NCBI GenBank assembly: GCA_036785375.1
Contig: JAWMAR010000026.1
Coordinates: forward strand, 7,936,001-8,000,000
From: Leucoraja ocellata
Taxonomy: Eukaryota
Length of the DNA stretch: 64,000 nucleotides
Reading direction: 5' to 3'
The position numbers and the translations under genes are program-made. The notes below the pieces were generated by a model. The model did not search any database. It worked only from the letters and a program-made list of their open reading frames with translations, and had not been told where the DNA came from. Below are positions 42,911-54,559 of the stretch, piece after piece (the stretch's first letter is position 1; each line of letters opens with the position of its first letter).

Positions 42911-42965
42911 ATGTTTATGTTTGCCGTGCTACTGTATCTCTCGATCCTGCATATGAGTCACACAG
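42911..42965 (+). CDS. Gene C leader exon
   Basis: 55 nt, ACAG|gttaac. Confidence 0.82.
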
Positions 42966-45900
42966 GTTAACATATTTCCCTCTATTAAACGAAAATAACA
43001 GGGAAAAGGTCAATCCGCGAAAAGTATAAGATGTACAACGCTTAATTTTCGGTCGAGCTATTTCAGCCATTTTGATTTTTTTATCAATCCGTTCATTGTC
43101 ATTTCACATGTTTAACGTTTGTTTTTAATTTTGACAGTTACTGAAGAGGCCTCCTCGTTCAGGGCGCGTCAGGTTCCCGATGAGGTAACGAAAGTGAAAG
43201 GTGAAAATGTATCCCTATACTGTACTTTCCCGAACTTCGGTCAGAATGCACTGGTGGATGTATACTGGAAGAGAGACGGTCAAGAAGGGACGTTGAATCC
43301 CACCGCAAACAGTAGGATGATAATGAACAATGTCCTGAAGGGATCGGCCGAATTACATCTGTTGAACGTGAGCTTCCGTGACTCCGGGATCTATTATTGC
43401 AGTGTGAGAGGCGGGAATGGAAAGACTTCCAAAAGCAATGGCACGAGGATTATTGTACACGGTGAGTCTTACTTGATGTTTCGAATCACAATACAAACAC
43501 AGAAATATGGTGTGCTACAGAGTTATAAAGTAGCAATAAACGGACCCTTTCTCAGTCTGTACTAGAAGTTTTGCTCTAACGATTTAAGTAATTGGTTTTT
43601 CGTGATTGTTGGACCATGAGATCTTTGGACAATCATTATTCTTTAATTTCCTATCATTTAGTTATTATTTATATGTGTAGGGTTAATTTTCTTGGCGGCC
43701 CCTCAACTGTATCCAGCGAAAGTATAGATTAAAATTGCAGATAGTAGTCAATTAAATATAAGCTATCATATGTTGGTGAGTATTGTAGCTAAAGTTGTTC
43801 AGTCAAAAAAACATTGCGTTCGAGTCGAGACCTGTGACATCCAGATGATGGAGCATTCTAGGGGGGTCGCGAATGGTGCTCTTTGATGCAGAATATCCAT
43901 GTTTGACCATTTATGTAGCTATTTCTAGTTCAACTAGTAAATGTTAACAACACGTATGTTGTTAGAAGAAACATTTGGTGAATAGTGAGCGTGATATATT
44001 CTAACCGCAATCTTCTGACAGACTATTCTACCATGATTTTAGGAATTCATAGTTTCAAAGAAAATCAATGAGAAAATACTAGTCACAACACATCTGCGAC
44101 TACATAAATTAGTTTCTGCCGACAACGTTATAGCGGAAGTAACAAAAGTTCATGATGAAAATTGTTCAAGAAATTCAGAGGTATAGCAGGGAAGAATAGG
44201 TGGGGTGCGTGGCGGCGCATTAGTATGGGTGGAAGACAAAAAAAATTACATGATAAACGGGGGAAAATCTGAGATTAATGCGACAAGTCACAAACCATGT
44301 AAACAAAGGAGATGAAAGTAGTACCAGAATTCAAATGATTAAATTGCAAATCGAGAATATTAATCAAAACGTTATCCGTCATTTTACTTCGAGTTTCATT
44401 GGAACTCAGCAGAGCGTCGAGTGGGAGAACAGAAGTTACAATACGAATGATAATTACACGTCAGCGTCGTACTCGATTTCTGGGTGGAAATATCCCACCG
44501 CACATTTCAATCCCACATCAGCAACTACTAATCTGAGGAAGAACATTCTTGCCATAGAGGGAGTACAGAGAAGGTTCACCAGACTGATTCCTGGGATGTC
44601 AGGACTTGCATATGAAGAAAGACTGGATAGACTCGGTTTGTACTCGCTAGAATTTAGAAGATTGAGGGGGGATCTTATAGAAACTTACAAAATTCTTAAG
44701 GGGTTGGACAGGCTAGATGCAGGAAGGTTGTTCCAGATGTTGGGGAAGTCCAGAACAAGGGGTCACAGTTTAAGGATACGGGGGAAATCTTTTAAGACCG
44801 AGATGAGGAAACATTTTTCACAGAAAGAGTGGTGAATCTCTGGGATTCGCGGCCACAGAAGGTAGTTGAGGCCAGTTCATTGGCTATATTTAAGAGGGAT
44901 TTGATGTGGCCCTTGTGGCTAAAGGCATCAGGGGTAATGGAGAGAAGACAGGTACAGGATACTGAATTGGATGATCAGCCATGATCATATTGAATGGCGG
45001 TGCAGGCTCGAAGGGCCGAATGGCCTATTCCTGCACCTATTTTCTATGTTTCTATGTTTACTGAATACACACAGACACGCTACCATACCTTGTCCAGTTT
45101 AAGTGCCGTGACATGTATTGCGAAGACGACAAATACCTAAAGCATCCCATCATTTTCGAAACTTATAACTACTCAAAAATCAATTCAACAACTCCTAAAG
45201 ATAGAACATGAATAGGTCCTTCGGCCCACAATTTCAGTGCCGAATATGGTGCCAAACTAAATAAATCTCCGCTCTGTGTGAGACATATCCTTTCATTCCC
45301 TATATTTGCCAATTTAAAAATATCTAAGATGCCCCTATCGGATCCGCCTCTGCAACTACGCATGATGTATTTAAGCTGGAAATGGTATAGAGCAGATTTA
45401 CGAGGATGTTGCCACGACGCGAGGGTCTGAGCTATAGGGAGAGCCGGAGCAGGCCAGGACTTTATTCTTTGCAGCGCAGGAGCGTAAGGGGTGAACTTAT
45501 TGAGGGGTATCTGATCATGACCGGAATAAATCTAGTATATGCATCGCCTTTTACCTAGAGTAGTGGAATCAAGTCCTTGTAAACGAAACATTTCACCACA
45601 TCAAATTACAATAACCGAGGAAAAGAAGTTTGCGTTGCAATTGAGAGATCAATTACCTGGCCGCCACCAGGGATTGTCAGTCCCATGCTCCCTTTTTTTC
45701 TTGGAACGCTTCAATTGCTTTCCACCAGGTGTTCATTTAATTTATTTTTCACGGTCTGATTAGCTCTGCTTCCAGTACATTTCCGATCACTACTTGTGAA
45801 AGATCCGCGGATATTTTCTGGTGAGAGCACTTGCGTAGATCAGTTTGGGATGGAGATCAATGATTTACCCTCCGATGTGGAGATAATGCTTTTGTTACGT

Positions 45901-48900
45901 GGACGGGAGCATAATGGTGACGCTCCTTTGCCTTTTGAGATGGTGTCCTATTTGGAGTTAAGTAATGGATGTTGCTAAACATTTCATTCTATTAAATGCC
46001 CCCCCCCCCCCCCCCCCCCATCAGCTCCTTTTTAATCAAATGCGGAACATAATTTATCCCTCTGAATCATTTCCAGTGGCCTTCCTACCACAGACTGGTT
46101 TACAGTTCCCAGACTTTTGCTTGCAGCCCTCAAATATAGCCACAATATGAGTCATCCACTAGTCTTCATATAGGTATTTACATGCGATTCCTCTGTTGAT
46201 ACACTCTTAATTTGATGTCTTGTTTCATCGATTCTCGGCGTCTGTAGATTTATTCCATTATAAGACACAACCGATGTGTTAACTCGCATCACCACATTCT
46301 AAATTAACTACTCCCCCCCCCCCCCCCCCCCCCCCCCCCACCGCCCTGCCTGCCACCCGATTTCCCTTTTTACCTTTATTATGTACACTAAAACTAAGGT
46401 GTCTTCGTCGTTTATCCTATTAAGATTTATCAGACTACTATTAAAAGTTCATCTTAAATACAACTCTGCAGAACGTTTTTCAAACTTGATCGGATCTTCC
46501 CACAGATTCCCAGTATTGTTTATTGTTGCTCCTAAAAATACCCTTTTCACTCAAAACTTTAGTTATTACCCGGGTAACACGAGATACTACACATTATGTC
46601 AAACGTGCAAATTATTCTGCGCGTTGTCCCTCAGAAGACTTCCACGCATACATAAAGCTGCTTCTGTCTTTCAGCATGTTTCACATATAATACAAACAGA
46701 ACTAAATTTATGATTTCATTAACGCAATTTTCCGTTTGATTGTACCACCTTGAACTCTGCCTTGTCTGGTGTAGCAACATTGCTTTCCCAGCAGATACCC
46801 AAACCCGTCCTATCACCAACTAAAGAGGTCAAGTCCATCTACCTTACTGGAGATTCTACCTACATTACTGGAGATTCTCAAACTATATTTTTATCGGACT
46901 TTACTGGACTTTATCTTGAGTTAAACAGACTCCGGTAATCCTGAATCTGTACAATGTGGACGGCTTGATTGTAATCATGTGTGGTAATTTCGCTGATTGA
47001 ATAACACACAACAAAAAGCATTTCACGGTGGCTCGGTACACGTGATAATAAACTAAAACTGTTAGGCACAAAACAAAAGTGAATCCCCCATGACCAGGAA
47101 ATCTCGGAGACAAGGTAGCTTTAACAAAGAGAGATGACCGAATGCTCTGTGCTCTCTTTCACAGAGACTTGGCTCACCCCTCTTCCCCAGACTCAGCCGT
47201 CCTTGCCGATAGTTTCTCCATTCGTCGCATGGGCAGAATGAAGCCGTTGGGGAAGGTGATGGGTGGTGACACCCGCCTCACATAGCGCTCATATATAGTG
47301 GTCCTGGCCAACTGCGTTATAACAAGTGTTTACTCTACTATATATTTCCAACAACATAGTCAAAATAATTTACTATTAAAGGAACGCCCAAAAAGGTATG
47401 GTATTATCCATTTCGAAAGCGATTACATTGTCTTCTAAATAAAGATATAGGGGTACTAACTCATTTGTCTTAAATTGTTTGCAGTGTCACCGACGCCTTT
47501 GAAGATTAAACAGGTGAACGTTCCTTCCCTGGCCCTAAACTGTACGACTGCTCCGTTTTTCCCGGAGGACTGTAAACTCACCTGGTATAAAGATGACCAA
47601 GAAATCACTTCTGGAATAAGTACCACTACAATACGGAACGACGAGGGATTATACGTTGCTTCCAGCTTCCTGCATGTAGTGGATCGCCGATCGAATTATA
47701 GTTGCCACGTGTCTCACGTCACCCTCCTGGTTCCGACCGTTGAAACTTACAGTTTTCCTGGAATGGGTATGAGGTTTATACCTTCAATAACGTCCTGAGA
47801 TATATCACTGTTTTATGTCAAGGCATTTCATGAATTCCCACCCAAAACGTACGCCAGACCGTTTTTAAGTATTTGGATGGAGATTGCGGGCATGTCTTTG
47901 TTGAAATGGAAAGGTATGACAGTCTACGAAACTAGATACGGGTTAGTAAGAGATATCGCGCAAAGATGACAATTGTGTTTGCATGTTTGTGTAATAGCGG
48001 ACGCTGGAACTCGCTGTTTATCTCCGATTATATAGAGCTCTACAGCATGGAAGCAAGGCCCTTCGGCCCGCCTCGTCCACGCCAAGCAAGTTGGCATTCT
48101 GGACTGGACCCATTTGACCATTTCCCCTCTAAATCTTTCCTATCCAAATATCTATCCAATATCATTTGAAAATCCACAATTGAATACGCTTCTGAAGCTT
48201 CCTCGGAAAGAAATTGCCCCTTGGGAACCTCGTAACCTTCCCTGTTAAGAATCCATTACCCTGGCAAAAACGACTGTAAGCATTCACTTTCTCTACGCCC
48301 ATCATAATTTTATATATTTCAATTAGGTAAACATCCCATGCCTCACGGGAAGAGGTTACAACCTGCTCAGCATTACCGGATAAATCAAGCCATCAAAGTA
48401 ATACGCTGATGAATCCTTTCTGCACCTTTTCCAACATAATGACATGCTACGTATAGGCAGGATGACCAGGACTGCACACAGAACACCAACGAGCACATAC
48501 TTGTAAAGCTGTTTCCCTGCATAATAAGGGCATTGTTTTCTGTTTATATGCAAATTAATTTTCAGTCTTAACGCTGTAACATTGCAGACTAAATCCAAAA
48601 TATTTCAAGTTCCAAGGGACCAATACCACAAGACAGAGGCCAAGGCAGATTTTATAGCATTAAAACAGATGATTTATTTTTCATTAACTCAGATGATTTA
48701 TTTTTCCATCGTTGCTGATCTGTGATGAGATTCAAACAGAAGAGGAAAATGAAAGGAAAGGAGAAATAAGAAAATGTTCGAAAGGTTATACATATAATAC
48801 GGATAAGCGATAATTCCGGCTGATGTGCGTTCCTCTGAACGGTCTGATATGTTCTGTGCTCCCAGACATTTCAAGACAGATTCTAAGGGGAATAGGAGGC

Positions 48901-51542
48901 AACCGCGACTGACAAGAGAAGTTAGGGATAGAATAAAATTAAAAGAAAAGATGCATAACGCAGTAAAGAGTAGTCGGAAGCCGGAGGATTGGGAAACTTT
49001 CATTGGACAACAGAAGGAAACAAAACGGGCAATACGGCTGAAAAGATGAAGTACGAGGGGAAGCTGGCCAGGAACATAAAGAAGGTCAGCAAAAGCCTCT
49101 TTAGATATGTTAAGGGAAAAAGAGTAGCAAAATCAGAAGGCAGACACGGGTGAAATTATTATGGGCACCAAGGAAATGGCAGAGGAGTTGAACAGGTACT
49201 TTGGATCTGTCTTCACTAAGGAAGACACAAACAATCTCCCAGAAGTACTGGAGGACAGAGGATCAAAGGGGGGTAGAGGAACTGAAATAAATTATAATTA
49301 GGCGATGTTCTGCATACCATGGTCCTCAGGGAGGTGGCTCTAGAAATATTGGACGCGCTGGTGATCATTTTCCAATGTTCAATAGATTCAGGATCAGTTC
49401 CTGTGGATTGGAGGATAGCTAATGTTATCCCACCTTTCATGAACGGAGCGAGAGAGAAAACGTGGATATACAGTCCAGTTAGCCTAACTTCGGTGGTGGG
49501 AAAGATGCTGGAGTCAATCATTAAGAGGTAATAATGGAGCATTTGGATAGCAGTAAAATGATTAATCCAAGTCAGCATGGATTTATGAAAGGAAAATCAT
49601 GCTTGACTAAGCTTCTGGAATTTTTTGAGGATGTGACAAGTAAAATGGATGAAGGGGAGGCAGTGGATGCAGTGTATCTAGACTTTCAGAAAACCTTTGA
49701 TAAGGTCCCGCATGGGAGACTGGTGACTAAAATTAGAGCACATGATATTGGGGGTAGGGTATTGACATGGATAGAACATTGGTTGGCAGACAAGAAGCAA
49801 AGAGTAGGAGTGAACGGGTCCTTTTCAGAGTGGCAGGCAGTGACGAGTGGAGTGCCGCAATGCTCGGTGTTGGTGCCGCAACTGTTTACCATATATATTA
49901 ATGATTTGGAAGAGGGAATTAGGAGCAACACTAGCAAGTTTGCAGATGACACAAAGCTGGGTGGCAGTGTGAACTGTGAAGAGGATGTTAGGACGTTGCA
50001 GGTTGACCTGGGCAGGTTGAGTGAGTGGGCAGATGCGTGGCAGATGCAGTATAATATAGATAAATATTAGGTTACCAACTTTGGTGGCAAAAACAAGGGG
50101 ACAGATTATTATCTCAATGGGTTTAGGTTAGGTAAGGGGGTACAGCGTGACCTGGGTGTCCTTGTACACCATTCACTGAAAGTTGGCGTGCAGGTACAGC
50201 AGGTAGTGAAGAAAACCAATGGCGTCGTTCACAGAATTTCAGTAGGCCTTTGATAAGGTGCCTTATGTGAGACCGCTAAACAAAATAGAATCGCATGGCA
50301 TTAGGAATTATCACGGATTGAAGATTGGCTTGCTGGCTGAAGACAAACCGTGGCAATAAAGGGGCCTTTTGTGGTTAGCTACGTTTTAATACTGGTATTC
50401 TGCAGGGGTCGGTGTTGAGTCTGCTACAATTTACATTATATGTTAATTGTCTAGAGGATGAAATTGATGGCTTTGTCGGCAGGTTTTCCGATGATATGAA
50501 GATAGGTGCAGATAGTGTTGAAGAAGCAGGGAGTCTGCAGAAGGACTTGGACAGCTTGGGAGCGTGAGTGTAAACAAGTGGCAGATGGAATGTTGTGTAG
50601 CAGTCATGCATTTGAGAGATGAGAGAAAATGTGGAACCCATCCTGTAATTCCCTGTTTCGTGTAATCTGATTATTTAATGAAGATAACCTCTCTGAAAAA
50701 TTCTAATATTCAGCTTTCATTTCCCTTTAGGAACAAGCCTTAAACTCATCTACTTTCGGGCGGGTGGATTTGCCATATGCGTGTTAATTATTCTAGCGGT
50801 GGTATTTTTTGTCAGGTGGTACGAATTAGACAGTACTGAAGGTAAGATGCGACTTCACCCTTGTCTGAGATTTGCGACATGAGGAACTGCAGATGCAAAA
50901 CGCAGTGCTGGAATAATTCGGCTATTTATGCAGCATCTGGAGAGGCAATGGATAGGGGGGGTTGGGTTTGAGTCACGTGTAAAGAAGGGTCCTGACCCGA
51001 AACTTCATCTACCGATGATCCCCGTAGACGACGCCTAACCCGCTGAATAACTACAACATTTCGTGTTTTCTCCGAAAATAACAATGTTCAATTGAAGGAG
51101 CAACGAGATGAGCTCATGTAACGATTTAAACACCAGGGCCTTTTTCTCCGGCCGTAGCATTATGTCCGTTGGCTGTAAAAGCATTGTTATCGTTTGTAAT
51201 ACAAGATGGCGCTGTTAACATTATGTGAAATGCTGCAAAGGTCGGGTTGTTTAAATAAGGGCAGTTATCACAGGAGAGCGTATTCAAACCAGAGGTTTTG
51301 AACTTTTCCACGCGCTTTTCCTCAGCAGTAGGACTAACGAGGAGAGGATTTGTTCAAATAACAAGAATAGCATGACCGCAATGATCACATTCTGCAGCCG
51401 AACGAATCTGGTCACAAATCGATTCTCAACTGATTATCGGCCGGCAGGTTGTGACATGTTGATAATTAAATTTGGTTGTTTATGTTCTCTGCTAGCCCCA
51501 GAACATATTGTGGACATAACCCACTACTTTGGAAACAAGTGA
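42911..51542 (+). CDS. Gene C: activating-type V(J)-C1-TM receptor (TM Arg, truncated tail), join(42911..42965,43138..43461,47485..47766,50731..50841,51496..51542), ~272 aa
   Basis: Canonical splice sites, all introns phase 1. Leader MFMFAVLLYLSILHMSHT; V with DSGIYYC and SNGTRIIVH; C1 with FFP, WYKD, YSCHVSH; TM LIYFRAGGFAICVLIILAVVFFV; tail APEHIVDITHYFGNK*. Confidence 0.83.
43138..43461 (+). CDS. Gene C V-set exon (germline-joined VJ type)
   Basis: 324 nt; GENVSLYCTFP...VYWKRDG...AELHLLNVSFRDSGIYYCSVRGGNGKTSKSNGTRIIVH|gtgag. Confidence 0.94.
44528..45058 (+). mobile_element. CR1 LINE 3' end in gene C intron 2
   Basis: NLRKNILAIEGVQRRFTRLIPG..., CTATGTTT tail. Confidence 0.92.
47485..47766 (+). 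CDS. Gene C C1-set exon
   Basis: 282 nt; VSPTPLKI...LNCTTAPFFPEDCKLTWYKD...EGLYVASSFL...YSCHVSHVTL. Confidence 0.92.
48866..50220 (+). mobile_element. CR1 LINE internal RT fragment in gene C intron 3
   Basis: QHGFMKGKSCLT...YLDFQKTFDKVPH...FADDTKL. Confidence 0.92.
50731..50841 (+). CDS. Gene C transmembrane exon with Arg (CGG at 50757-50759)
   Basis: 111 nt, colinear with 4412..4522; GTSLKLIYFRAGGFAICVLIILAVVFFVRWYELDSTE. Confidence 0.88.
51496..51542 (+). CDS. Gene C short cytoplasmic exon with early stop
   Basis: Paralogue of 5131..5174, 1 nt shorter, donor changed to CAA|gtgatt; read-through gives AAG TGA. Confidence 0.7.
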
Positions 51543-51744
51543 TTTTCTTGTATAACCTGTCGTATCATGTTCTGCAAATGGACGCCTGTAATTATAATCA
51601 CATTGATGGGCGAACAGGATGGTTCCATTTTTCGTGAAACTCTCTATGTGTCTCGTTTGCAATTTTTCTTATCCTCCCGTATTCTTATGGTATAGTCCAT
51701 GATCGTCAGCGACCAGCGCTTGCGAATCTTTCTCCCAAACAGTT

Positions 51745-52285
51745 ACATAGAAACATATAAAACAGGTGCAGTAGTAGGCCATTGGACCCTTCGAGCCAGC
51801 ACCGTCATCTAATATGATCATGGTTGATCATCCAGAATCAGTACCCTGTACCTGATTTCTCCCCATATCCCTAGACCCTAGAGCTATATCCAACTCTCTG
51901 TTGAATGCATCCAGTGAACTGGCCCCCACTGCCTTCTGCGGCAGAGAATTCCACAGATTCACAGCTCTCTGGGTGAAAACGTGTGTCCTTATCTCAGTCC
52001 TAAATGGCCTACCCCATATTCTTAAACTGTGACTCTTGATTCTGGACTCCCCCAACAAGGGGAACATTTTCTTGCATCTAGCCTGTCCAATCCCTGAATA
52101 GTTTTATATGTTTGATGACGCATCCTTCTAAATTCCAGTGAATATAAGCCCAGTCGATCCATTCTTTCGTCATATATCAGTCACGCCATCCCGGAAATTA
52201 AACTGGTGAACCAACGCTGCACTCTCACAATACCAATAATGTCCTTCCTCAAACTAGGACACCTAATACCTGCATGTTAACTTTC
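51745..52285 (-). mobile_element. CR1 3' end specific to duplicate copy 2
   Basis: [14 protein letters not shown] on the minus strand; absent at paralogous ~5395. Confidence 0.85.
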
Positions 52286-52296
52286 AGTTTATGTCT

Positions 52297-52472
52297 AAGA
52301 AAGAACTTCGGATGCTGGAAAAATCAAAGGTAGTCAAAAATGCTGGAGAAACTCAGCCTGCGAGGCAGCATCTATGAAGAGAAGCAATAGGCGACGTTTC
52401 GGGTCGATACCCTTCTTCAGACTGATCAAACTGAGGTAGAGTCTCGACCCGAAACGCCGCCTATTCTCTACC
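52297..52472. mobile_element. Penelope-type inverted repeat with intact minus-strand hammerhead core
   Basis: Minus strand CTGAAGAAGGGTATCGACCCGAAACGTC. Confidence 0.7.
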
Positions 52473-52911
52473 TTCAGTTTATGTATAACCCGTCTGTGTC
52501 AAGCGAATTAAACACTCCGTGAAGCATCATCACCGAGGCCCATCCTGTTCTAATTCGAAACTCACACGACATTTTTTGTGCAGTAGCTCGTACTGATATA
52601 TGACGGAAAATATTGCTAACATGTCTGAGCCCAGAAACCGCGCCACCTGGATATTTTCCCAGAAGTTATCATCCAACAAACTTCCGGTCAGTGTTCTGCA
52701 CCACACGTGTCAAGATTTGGCTAATAGTCACTAATTATTCAGGAAAAGCAAACCAATTACTTCAATTACTTTTTAGGGCTCTTATCCCAGGGAAGTAGCC
52801 GTTTATAGCGTATAGCACAACCAACTTTCACCCCATTGTTTTATGTTTCCTCGTCTTCGCAGTTGTTTGTAAATGCGGAGTTTATTTCTCTTCCAATATA
52901 TGTTCCCTCAG

Positions 52912-53217
52912 AATGCGACGTGTGCAGATTTGAACGTCAGCGGACAGAGGAAAACTGAGAAAAACAGACGGCACGAAAAACAAACTACCAATGCCCAGGT
53001 AAGATAAAAGCGGAAGGGTGCTCCAATATAAATTCGCGTACGTCGTCCATATAGGCGAATCGGCAGCTAATGATCTCTGATTATTTTTCGATAGGTCAAA
53101 GAAGTGTCTGAAAATAAGCTGACCAATGCTACTCTGGATCTCATCGCTTCTCCGAAAGACCCAAGAACGGAGAAGAATAATGTAACAGAATATGCAGGAA
53201 TGAAGATTTTAATATAG
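52912..53217 (+). pseudogene. Relic ITIM/ITSM exons of gene C (52912..52998, 53095..53217), now out of frame
   Basis: Colinear with 5852..5938 and 6035..6157; NATCADL...TTNAQ / ...LTNATL...TEYAGM; splice sites intact. Confidence 0.85.
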
Positions 53218-54559
53218 CTGCGAAATCATCAAACGTTCATTAACGTTCATCCAATTTCAATTCCATAAACCTTACTAACATTGGGTCACAGATTGTACAG
53301 ATACATTAGCATTTACAAGAGAATCAGCAGTGAGCAGGGAATTTTAATGAGAGATGTTCTACTCTGATATACGTTACCCCCCTTAACGTCGATAGAAATA
53401 CGATAAATGATCAGACAATCGACCAAAGGTTTACCAAAATGTAATACTGTCAACACTTAAAACATATAAGACAAATGGGACACTTACTGATTTTGAAGCT
53501 CCCTTACGAGATCTCGGTACCTAACCCCCCCCCCCCCCCCCCCCGTTATAGCGCAATATATAGTATTCACGACGTTACTCAACGGGGGAAGGGGGACGTG
53601 GGGGGGGGGGGGGGGGGCTGGACAACACACAGAATTAAACATCGCTATAATATTTGAGCAAACTAGATTTTTAATGCATGATTTGAAGTTCTATTCATTA
53701 TTACGTATTTCAGTGGAAAGCTTAAACACAAAAGATAAACAATTAAAACATATACTGTTACTGGTTTTAATTCACACACTTCACACGTGACCAAATGGAC
53801 GCTCACGTTCTGTTGCAAAAACTTGGGGTATCAGAAAATCATCTTATCGGGTGATAAATTATAAAAATCATAAGCATAATCAGAATTTGACTTATTTAAT
53901 TGTAAAATTAATGCAATCTCTCTGGTATACATTAGCTGTAGGATTTGATGAAATCAAATGTTGCTTGCAAAATGTCACAAAAAAGGCAAGAACACAGGGA
54001 TATATCTGCTTTTTTTTCTTTGTGAAAATAGATTTATTTATTTTTGCTTCATTTCATTATTTTGGCTATACTCCATGATTTATACTACTTAAAATACAGG
54101 ATATGAAACAATGAGAATATTACATAAAAAAACAAGGAAATATTCTGGAAGTTTGGAGACCTCAGTTTCACTACTGAGTGCTGTTTTTTTACGGAAACAC
54201 CTAAATCAGTTCCTCTCTATTGCGCCAATACCGAGGAATTCCACAATATAGCCCGAAGACATCCAACGAGCAGTAATAAAATGTGGCTGGAAAACGTAGC
54301 AAAGTTGGGGATTATGAGAACTTTAGGCTTCACCTACGAGGTTAAGGGCAGTTAGAAGGGTGGATGTAGAATATAAGATGAAGCTGACATCAAAACCTTC
54401 TATGTATAAGTGTCTGCGTATGTGCGTGCGTGTGAAGAGGGAACATAGATTATGGAAATTTTAAGTACCTACAGTCGGGACCAGTGTCATTTATACAGGG
54501 TTTGAATTATCAATTCATAAAACAGTCATAGCAGGACAATTAAATATGCCATTTGATTA

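What the first reader, a model, noticed from the sequence alone, without database searches (positions are those of the whole stretch)
50731..53217. Birth of an activating receptor from an inhibitory one: gene C is a rewired duplicate of gene Z
Seen: the TM and tail exons of C align without large gaps to those of Z (4412..6157). Relative to Z, C has (1) TM Leu>Arg by one base (CTG 4438-40 vs CGG 50757-59: YFLAGG > YFRAGG); (2) the 44-nt exon shortened to 43 nt with donor CAG|gtaatg > CAA|gtgatt, so the tail stops early whether read through (GNK*) or spliced (KMRRVQI*); (3) motif tyrosines changed TAT>TGT (52921), TAT>AAT (52990), TAT>AAT (53125); (4) the last motif TEYAGI > TEYAGM. Established: an N-terminal TM Arg couples NKp30, NKp46, LILRA and FcalphaRI to FcRgamma/CD3zeta, and activating KIR/Ly49 arose from inhibitory ancestors by gaining TM charge and losing ITIMs. 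Inference: the same conversion occurred independently in this lineage, with all steps still legible. Direction is inferred because C retains relic ITIM exons.
Basis: partly seen in the sequence, partly recalled or inferred. Interest (0 to 1): 0.93.

Follow-up and report, generated by a model that had tools for sequence, protein, structure and literature searches.

The report
Inhibitory receptor copy rewired as activating
In a cartilaginous-fish immune-receptor cluster, one copy of an inhibitory signalling tail has gained a membrane arginine and lost its inhibitory motifs, a switch long known from mammalian NK-cell receptors; whether this gene is expressed or works is not shown.

Summary
The C block 50217-53421 is a colinear copy of the Z block 3071-6371, about 77-80% identical. 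It carries CTG>CGG (Leu>Arg) in the TM exon, a 44>43-nt exon, three Tyr codons changed, and I>M.

Contigs of two organisms carry the C block. They are identical to the window in X1. In X3 they differ by about 2% and show no gap in the 43-nt exon.

The genes are V-set + one C1-set receptors of a chondrichthyan family that NCBI names SIRPalpha-like or tapasin-related-like. Ray and shark relatives show that Leu, the in-frame 15-residue exon and Tyr 1, 3 and 4 are ancestral. The direction inhibitory > Arg/ITIM-less is therefore supported.

The same shift recurs in stingrays, with the tail cut at the same exon boundary.

Function is not shown. Two RNA runs gave no reads on C's exons, the new stop should invite NMD, and only the 3' cassette is shown to be duplicated.

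This is a new member of a known kind, the KIR/Ly49-type functional shift (PMC2213150). The scan noted a similar "converted" gene about 29 kb upstream (s1-884690), which I did not check.

The parts
42911..42965 (+). gene C leader exon (MFMFAVLLYLSILHMSHT, ends in phase 1)
43138..43461 (+). gene C V-set exon, open, phase 1-1, canonical Cys/Trp/Cys
   Evidence: (PF07686 E 1.8e-13)
47485..47766 (+). gene C C1-set exon, open, phase 1-1
   Evidence: (PF07654 E 7.7e-13)
49070..50222 (.). LINE-like fragment in the C1-TM intron of C; the homology to Z starts at its 3' edge
50731..50841 (+). gene C TM exon (111 nt); Arg codon CGG at 50757-50759; RRCK of Z replaced by RWYE
51496..51538 (+). gene C 43-nt exon (44 nt in Z); donor CAA|gtgatt; TGA at 51540-42 if read through
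51745..52470 (.). repeat insertion in intron 2 of C, absent from Z
52912..52998 (+). relic tail exon 3 of C (NATCADLNV...TTNAQ in the old frame); in the new frame stop TGA at 52931-33
53095..53217 (+). relic tail exon 4 of C (KLTNATLDL...TEYAGM in the old frame)
4412..4522 (+). Z TM exon, Leu codon CTG 4438-4440
5131..5174 (+). Z 44-nt exon
5852..5938 (+). Z tail exon 3 (NPTYADLNF...TTYGQ)
6035..6157 (+). Z tail exon 4 (ELTYATLDL...TEYAGIRIIK*); AATAAA at 6396

Best explanation
Gene C (leader 42911, V 43138-43461, C1 47485-47766, TM 50731-50841) belongs to a chondrichthyan family of V + C1 receptors with SIRPalpha-like tails. Its signalling cassette descends from an inhibitory, Z-like cassette. 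On C's lineage three things happened. A T>G change put an Arg at about the fifth residue of the membrane helix. A 1-nt deletion in the 44-nt exon, with a weakened donor, ends the tail about 30 residues after the membrane. The old ITIM/ITSM exons were left as untranslated relics. The predicted product is a short-tailed receptor with an Arg in the TM. By analogy it would pair through the Arg with an acidic residue of an ITAM adaptor of the FcRgamma/CD3zeta type and activate instead of inhibit. This is a KIR/Ly49-style functional shift. Shown: the paralogy, the bases and the direction of change. Inferred: expression, the splicing pattern, adaptor pairing and activation.
For: Paralogy and bases.

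Reads: X1 contigs are identical to the window. X3 contigs, about 2% diverged, keep the 43-nt length.

Intact upstream gene: leader, V, C1 and TM exons are open, with phase 1 junctions and AG/GT sites.

Polarity: 7 of 7 Mobula/Hemitrygon relatives have Leu at the site, a 15-residue in-frame e2 and Tyr at motifs 1, 3 and 4. Shark relatives have TVYAQ at motif 2.

One subfamily: C's V and C1 are 50-53% identical to those same ray proteins but only 27-41% to the other three genes of the window. Ectodomain and cassette therefore belong to one subfamily.

TM core: the core of 21 codons differs between Z and C by only 3 replacement changes, L>R, L>V and A>V (counted by eye).

Family logic: Arg in the outer TM goes with no ITIM/ITSM in 13 of 14 Arg proteins; 33 of 46 proteins without Arg have motifs.

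Independent parallel: the stingray proteins P0172/P0173 (Hypanus, Hemitrygon) align ungapped over 182 residues (69% identity) with the ITIM-tailed P0084. They have Arg where P0084 has Gly, and they end 7 residues after the e2 equivalent.

Precedents: hominoid activating KIR, rat Ly49s3 and macaque KIR3DH (PMC2213150, passages). Macaque Arg-KIR bind FcRgamma, not DAP12 (PMC8102735, abstract start as listed in the search).
Against: - No RNA support. Runs X24 (oligo-dT bulk) and X23 (single cell) of the organism about 2% diverged gave depth 0 on the bins holding the C1 exon, e2, e3 and e4, and no RNA joints. Only 5% and 3% of these runs were read, and the tissue is unknown.
- If e2 is spliced to e3, the stop (52931-33) lies 65 nt before the e3/e4 junction, a position expected to trigger NMD (rule recalled).
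- The e2 donor lost its -1 G.
- The juxtamembrane RRCK became RWYE, so positive charges are lost.
- Exons differ between Z and C nearly as much as non-exonic DNA: 55 of 364 against 279 of 1578 (my arithmetic gives z about 1.2).
- The indel deficit in exons is not significant for the C lineage alone (P = 0.24).
- In the listed rows between the window and X3, 5 of 6 changed exon codons are replacements (read).
- Z's canonical AATAAA has no counterpart in C.
- Adaptors of cartilaginous fish were not examined.
Confidence: 0.5

Rival explanations
1. C is a dying or dead gene. The Arg, the frameshift, the weakened donor, the lost tyrosines and the lost juxtamembrane charges are neutral decay of a redundant copy, and no working receptor is made.
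For: - No RNA reads lie on C's unique exons in 2 of 2 RNA runs laid.
- Exon divergence is about equal to intron divergence, and e2 is the most diverged segment at 76.7% identity.
- The stop lies 65 nt before the last junction, which predicts NMD.
- The poly(A) signal of Z is not kept.
- Most exon differences listed between the window and X3 are replacements.
- PMC2213150 notes that activating receptors are often later inactivated (discussion passage).
Against: - Leader, V, C1 and TM exons (256 codons) have no stop or frameshift and keep their splice sites.
- The one frame-breaking event sits exactly where it removes the ITIM tail and nothing else.
- The TM core is conserved.
- The same architecture is annotated in two stingray genera.
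- The RNA sampling was shallow and of unknown tissue.
Confidence: 0.33
2. C makes a surface protein that signals neither way: a decoy or SIRPgamma-like short-tailed receptor. The Arg is tolerated but not used for adaptor pairing.
For: - The short tail lacks motifs.
- 13 of 60 family proteins lack both Arg and motifs by the script's criterion, although two of these (P0103, P0083) carry an Arg that the criterion missed. Signal-less forms therefore appear to exist.
- The SIRP review describes SIRPgamma as such a form (PMC12975943, passages).
Against: An unpaired Arg in the outer third of a TM helix usually hinders surface expression unless an adaptor is present (recalled). In this family Arg and the lack of motifs go together.
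Confidence: 0.1
3. The polarity at the TM site is the reverse. The common ancestor of Z and C had both Arg and ITIMs (a dual receptor). Z lost the Arg (CGG>CTG), while C lost the tail.
For: - Either direction needs one base change.
- Two other genes of the window carry an Arg in the outer TM: gene D ...WIRAGL... at 57032-56940 and gene A ...CVRIIC... at 12302-12204.
- Rat Ly49 shows such dual intermediates (PMC2213150).
Against: - 7 of 7 closest outgroup proteins with the colinear TM exon have Leu. None of the 33 proteins scored as motif-bearing and Arg-free has a charge there.
- Gene D's Arg codon is AGA, not CGG, and its TM exon is not detectably related to Z/C at the DNA level.
Confidence: 0.07
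4. Assembly or sequencing error created the Arg codon or the 43-nt exon.
For: None found.
Against: Contigs of X1 match the window exactly. Contigs of X3, from another organism label, show no gap in e2 and no listed change at 50757-59.
Confidence: 0.02

Closest known systems
Hominoid short-tailed activating KIR derived from inhibitory KIR; rat Ly49s3 (Abi-Rached and Parham 2005, PMC2213150; passages read)
   Same: An inhibitory paralogue is the ancestor. A few point changes place a basic residue in the TM and cut off the ITIMs. The remaining tail sequence is left as a relic. In rat Ly49s3 the order is charge first, ITIM loss second.
   Different: Those use Lys with DAP12 (KIR) or are type II lectins (Ly49), and their function is shown. 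Here the residue is an Arg near the outer end of the TM, the fold is V + C1, the lineage is cartilaginous fish, and function is untested.
Macaque KIR3DH (PMC2213150 passage; PMC8102735, abstract start as listed in the search)
   Same: A TM Arg is combined with a frameshift in the tail that removes two ITIMs. The Arg pairs with FcRgamma rather than DAP12.
   Different: The macaque frameshift comes from skipping an exon, and the cassette was acquired by recombination from KIR2DL4. Here a 1-nt deletion changed the frame inside a cassette of inhibitory type.
Mammalian SIRPalpha / SIRPbeta pair (PMC12975943, passages)
   Same: V-set plus C1-set ectodomain. The inhibitory form has a multi-tyrosine tail (four tyrosines in Z). 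The partner has a charged TM residue and a short tail. NCBI names the relatives 'tyrosine-protein phosphatase non-receptor type substrate 1-like'.
   Different: SIRPs have three Ig domains (V + 2 C1), while these have V + 1 C1. SIRPbeta pairs with DAP12 through its charged TM residue. Orthology and CD47 binding are unknown.
Stingray proteins XP_059849420.1 (P0172, Hypanus sabinus) and XP_072926702.1 (P0173, Hemitrygon akajei)
   Same: Same family. The TM exon is of inhibitory type and carries an Arg in its outer part. The tail ends 7 residues after the e2 equivalent, the same break point as in C.
   Different: A different subfamily (46% identity in C1). The Arg replaces a Gly at a slightly different depth, so the event is independent.
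Family-wide dedicated Arg TM exon (P0167/P0168 Mobula hypostoma, P0170/P0171 Heptranchias perlo, P0015 Chiloscyllium plagiosum)
   Same: It gives the same subfamily an Arg-TM, short-tailed partner. The P0167 ectodomain is 84% identical to the ITIM-tailed P0009.
   Different: It is a different, old exon (..INLCRILLGL..IV[DN][HY]L), conserved between sharks and rays. C does not use it, and none lies near C on the + strand. C made its Arg inside an inhibitory-type exon.

Membership tests
Activating receptor formed by functional shift of an inhibitory paralogue (KIR/Ly49 type) | Signalling cassette paralogous to that of an ITIM-bearing gene | tested here: met
   Colinear at 77-80% identity from 0.5 kb before the TM exon to 0.2 kb past the stop.
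Activating receptor formed by functional shift of an inhibitory paralogue (KIR/Ly49 type) | Basic residue inside the TM helix | tested here: met
   CGG at 50757-59. The Arg is about the fifth residue of LIYFRAGGFAICVLIILAVVFFV. The bases stand in contigs of X1, and no change is listed for X3.
Activating receptor formed by functional shift of an inhibitory paralogue (KIR/Ly49 type) | ITIMs removed from the translated tail | tested here: met
   The 43-nt exon gives GNK* or (K)MRRVQI*. This holds for the two splice patterns considered. The real pattern is unknown.
Activating receptor formed by functional shift of an inhibitory paralogue (KIR/Ly49 type) | Inhibitory state ancestral | tested here: met
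   At protein level only. 7 of 7 closest ray relatives have Leu, an in-frame e2 and Tyr 1, 3 and 4. No outgroup DNA was available.
Activating receptor formed by functional shift of an inhibitory paralogue (KIR/Ly49 type) | Gene expressed | tested here: inconclusive
   Zero depth on C's unique exon bins in 2 of 2 RNA runs, with 3-5% of each run read, tissue unknown, and the organism about 2% diverged.
Activating receptor formed by functional shift of an inhibitory paralogue (KIR/Ly49 type) | Arg-dependent association with an ITAM adaptor and activating signal | not testable with these tools
   Needs co-expression and cross-linking assays.
SIRP family (SIRPalpha/beta) | One V-set and two C1-set domains | tested here: not met
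   One V exon and one C1 exon lie before the TM exon. No further Ig-like open frame lies on the + strand between 43562 and 50731. Relatives are also V-C1-TM.
SIRP family (SIRPalpha/beta) | Tyrosine-motif tail that recruits SHP-1/2 (inhibitory member) | tested here: inconclusive
   Z has PTYADL, TTYGQV, LTYATL and TEYAGI. Binding of SHP-1/2 was not tested. The likeness to the human motifs is recalled.
SIRP family (SIRPalpha/beta) | Binding of CD47; orthology to SIRP genes | not tested
   Only the names given by NCBI's pipeline are available.
UrIg / UrIg2 (PDB 9dmx) | VJ domain followed by many C1-type domains (nine in nurse shark UrIg2) | tested here: not met
   9dmx is the best solved-structure match of C's C1 exon (E 3e-15), but C has a single C1. 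The architecture is taken from a passage of PMC12227049.
Unprocessed pseudogene | Disabling change in otherwise required coding sequence, and no expression | tested here: inconclusive
   No stop or frameshift in the leader, V, C1 or TM exons. The only frame change removes the tail. No RNA was seen.

The most novel reading that the evidence does not exclude
C is a working activating receptor made de novo inside an inhibitory-type cassette, in a cartilaginous-fish V-C1 family that also owns an ancient dedicated Arg-TM exon. With the independent stingray case, which breaks at the same exon boundary, and perhaps a second converted gene 29 kb upstream, this would show two things. First, the KIR/Ly49-style 'functional shift' is a recurrent, family-wide route. 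Second, it operates in the oldest living jawed-vertebrate lineage, with the intermediate steps still readable in the DNA.
Probability: 0.4. Interest if true: 0.5.

Novelty: new member of a known kind. Interest (0 to 1): 0.35.

Why it matters
Paired inhibitory and activating receptors are a general feature of vertebrate innate immunity. How activating partners arise has been worked out mainly in primates and rodents.

This locus gives a clean, base-by-base example in a cartilaginous fish. The TM exon was recharged by one base, the tail was removed by a one-base deletion, and the ITIM exons were left with intact splice sites.

If C is functional, it extends the 'functional shift' route to the base of jawed vertebrates. 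Arg-adaptor pairing would then become testable in a lineage whose NK-type and myeloid receptors are almost unstudied.

If C is a pseudogene, it is an ordinary by-product of birth-and-death evolution in a receptor cluster.

The concept is not new in either case. The three searches aimed at this family, which cover open-access papers and bioRxiv only, listed no title or abstract start describing this chondrichthyan V-C1 family or its paired forms.

Tried and rejected
Led nowhere or rejected:
- Closer outgroups. The C1 exon of C was searched against 1.84 billion representatives. Best identity was 54%, and no protein of the window's own species or of a near relative was found (best 65% to any window exon).
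- A search with P0009 residues 216-350 and a profile search with A3 returned only Mobula, Hemitrygon, Heterodontus and Heptranchias proteins.
- UrIg membership was rejected: one C1 against many.
- No ancient-type Arg TM exon lies near C.
- An in-frame alternative donor for C's e2 exists only at 14 nt (ATT|gtggac) and looks poor (by eye).
- Tests on indels, substitution rates and Tyr hits do not separate 'functional' from 'decaying' for C.
-, a bacterial promoter/terminator scan, was a mistaken call and says nothing.
- The species was not identified: run and organism names are coded.
- I did not open any supplements. Those of PMC12227049 and PMC2213150 may list further shark V-C1 genes or KIR reconstructions that bear on novelty.

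Full report
WHAT IS THERE. The window holds a cluster of receptor genes, each built from a V-set exon and one C1-set exon (Pfam, 8 of 8 exons tested). Three lie on the minus strand: V 18361-17903 / C1 17514-17095; V 33174-32749 / C1 32112-31747; V 63419-62982 / C1 60969-60622. One lies on the plus strand: gene C, with leader 42911-42965, V 43138-43461 and C1 47485-47766. At the left edge of the window lies the 3' part of a further gene, Z.

A self-comparison shows that C 50217-53421 and Z 3071-6371 are colinear copies, 76.6-80.3% identical. They are interrupted by a repeat insertion of about 726 bp in C (51745-52470) and a Z-specific insertion (about 3463-4185).
- CTG>CGG at 50757-59.
- e2 of 43 instead of 44 nt, with donor CAA|gtgatt instead of CAG|gtaatg.
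- TAT>TGT, TAT>AAT and TAT>AAT at the first three motif tyrosines.
- ATC>ATG in the last motif.

Read-through of e2 stops at once (GNK*). After a 43-nt e2 the e3 frame reads MRRVQI*. I worked the junction codons out by hand and neither built nor searched a joined model.

ARE THE BASES REAL. Contigs of run X1 match the window exactly over both halves of the block. Contigs of X3, a different organism label with about 2% of letters different, cover the TM exon and e2 without gaps. Their listed changes are at 50736, 50762 and 51511, but none at the Arg codon. The table was cut (290 rows not shown), and X3's letters in e3/e4 were not displayed. X1 may be the sample behind the assembly. An assembly error is very unlikely.

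WHAT FAMILY. The C1 exon's best solved relative is shark UrIg2 (9dmx, E 3e-15). [quoted passage not shown]

A scan of 1.84 billion representatives with C's C1 exon brought a large set of 200-450-residue proteins from sharks, rays and the elephant fish. NCBI names them 'tyrosine-protein phosphatase non-receptor type substrate 1-like' (SIRPalpha-like), 'tapasin-related protein-like' or 'signal-regulatory protein beta-1 isoform 3-like'. Best identity was 54%, so the window's own species is not in that library.

The closest subfamily (Mobula birostris, M. hypostoma, Hemitrygon akajei: P0009, P0151-P0156) is colinear with C and Z exon by exon: V, C1, a 36-residue TM exon, a 15-residue e2, then two tail exons. 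C's V and C1 are 50-53% identical to these proteins, but only 27-41% to the other genes of the window. C's ectodomain and its cassette therefore belong together. Mammalian SIRPs have V + two C1 domains (PMC12975943). These genes resemble SIRPs but fail that defining feature.

DIRECTION OF CHANGE.
- At the Leu/Arg site, 7 of 7 ray relatives have Leu.
- e2 is in frame in all of them.
- Tyr 1 (SYADL), Tyr 3 (L-x-Y-[AT]-C) and Tyr 4 (TEYAGI) are kept.
- Shark relatives have TVYAQ at Tyr 2, whereas the rays have Asn there (ELTNAL) in an otherwise inhibitory tail.

C's states are therefore derived, and the loss of Tyr 2 carries little weight. A dual Arg+ITIM ancestor is not excluded. I give it 0.07.

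THE SAME THING ELSEWHERE IN THE FAMILY. I examined 60 stored family proteins that have a TM after the C1 signature (taken from 188 stored; 97 are of 200-470 aa, and 86 of these have the signature).

| | no ITIM/ITSM | with motif |
|---|---|---|
| Arg in outer TM | 13 | 1 |
| no Arg | 13 | 33 |

Isoforms and orthologues are counted separately, so these numbers describe rather than test.

Two kinds of Arg forms exist:
- One uses an old, dedicated exon (..INLCRILLGL..), shared by Mobula, Heptranchias and Chiloscyllium. Gene A of the window resembles it.
- The other, like C, has an Arg inside an inhibitory-type TM exon. Examples are Hypanus/Hemitrygon ..ILRCAMG.., Heterodontus ..LLISRCAWGG.., Hemitrygon ..LLISRCVW.. 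and Scyliorhinus ..GFRYTVGG...

The Hypanus protein aligns ungapped with an ITIM-tailed Mobula protein up to the last residue of the e2 equivalent and then ends after 7 residues. That is the same break point as in C.

Gene D of the window has Arg before Ala-Gly, as C does, but with codon AGA and an unrelated exon.

DOES C WORK. In favour:
- 256 upstream codons are open, with correct phases and splice sites.
- The TM core is conserved.
- The only frame-breaking change removes exactly the inhibitory tail.
- The architecture recurs in annotated genes of other species.

Against:
- No reads on C's unique exons and no RNA joints in a bulk oligo-dT run and a single-cell run of the organism about 2% diverged. 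Only 5% and 3% of the runs were read, and the tissue is unknown.
- In the spliced form the stop lies 65 nt before the last exon junction, which should invite NMD (rule recalled).
- The donor is weaker, and RRCK became RWYE.
- Exon divergence (55/364) is close to that of non-exonic DNA (279/1578).
- The indel deficit in exons (1 against 5.5 expected, P = 0.026) cannot be assigned to C's lineage (P = 0.24).
- Three of four tyrosines hit has P = 0.06.

I put 'Arg-TM, ITIM-less receptor that activates through an ITAM adaptor' at 0.5, 'decaying gene' at 0.33 and 'signal-less receptor' at 0.1.

LIMITS OF 'DUPLICATE OF Z'. The homology to Z starts at the edge of a LINE fragment in C (49070-50222). 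No C1-like exon lies in the 4.4 kb before Z's TM exon. Only the cassette is shown to be duplicated. Z's ectodomain, and whether Z is a complete gene, remain unknown.

COMPARISON AND VERDICT. The mechanism matches the 'functional shift' that produced hominoid activating KIR (a TM Lys plus a stop in the first ITIM), rat Ly49s3 (charge first, ITIM loss later) and macaque KIR3DH (a TM Arg plus a frameshift removing the ITIMs) (PMC2213150, passages). Macaque Arg-KIR use FcRgamma (PMC8102735, abstract start as listed in the search).

The finding is real and neatly legible, but it is a new member of a known kind and its function is unproven. In the three searches aimed at this family (open-access and bioRxiv only, supplements not opened), no listed title or abstract start described this chondrichthyan family. 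An unchecked note of this scan (s1-884690) reports another 'converted' gene with relic ITIM exons about 29 kb before the window. Interest 0.35.

Noticed in passing
window 57032-56940 (minus): The TM exon of the gene with V 63419-62982 / C1 60969-60622 reads ..GWIRAGLIAIIIVIFIVIYK. Its Arg (AGA) sits directly before Ala-Gly, the same R-A-G context as in gene C. The inhibitory genes have L-A-G (Z) and I-A-G (30380-30279).
   Followed up: partly
window 12302-12204 (minus): The TM exon of the gene with V 18361-17903 reads ..[11 protein letters not shown]... It resembles the Arg TM exon shared by sharks and rays (INLCRILLGL.. in P0167, P0170, P0015).
   Followed up: partly
window 1-4411: No C1- or V-like exon lies upstream of Z's TM exon within the window. 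The homology to C starts at 3071, and a reverse-transcriptase-like open frame (3439-3930) sits in the intron. Z's Ig exons lie further upstream, or Z is an orphan cassette.
   Followed up: partly
window 6396 and 53421-54280: Z has AATAAA about 240 nt after its stop. The Z/C homology ends just before that point, and C has no signal there. C's next signals are ATTAAA at 53634 and 53742 and AATAAA at 54275.
   Followed up: no
window 53527-53617: A run of about 19 C and a run of about 18 G flank roughly 55 nt just downstream of gene C. This could be a hairpin-forming element or an assembly oddity.
   Followed up: no
P0009, P0151-P0155 (Mobula, Hemitrygon): The ray proteins closest to C/Z have Asn instead of Tyr at the second tail motif (ELTNAL) but keep the other three. 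That tyrosine has therefore been lost independently in a receptor that is still ITIM-bearing.
   Followed up: partly
P0172/P0173 against P0084: The stingray Arg-TM proteins end 7 residues after the e2 equivalent (MKRTVST / MKRTIST), conserved between two genera. This is a stable short-tailed architecture with the same break point as gene C.
   Followed up: partly
window 47694-47748, run X3: In the last 147 nt of C's C1 exon the second organism differs at 4 bases in 3 codons, all replacements (N>V, S>F, Y>H). Two of them move towards the family consensus (SVYTC, VFH).
   Followed up: partly
window 48800-50400 and 51750-52550: The repeats in C's introns are abundantly represented in both RNA runs, on both strands. 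Loose ends show that these reads come from other copies.
   Followed up: no
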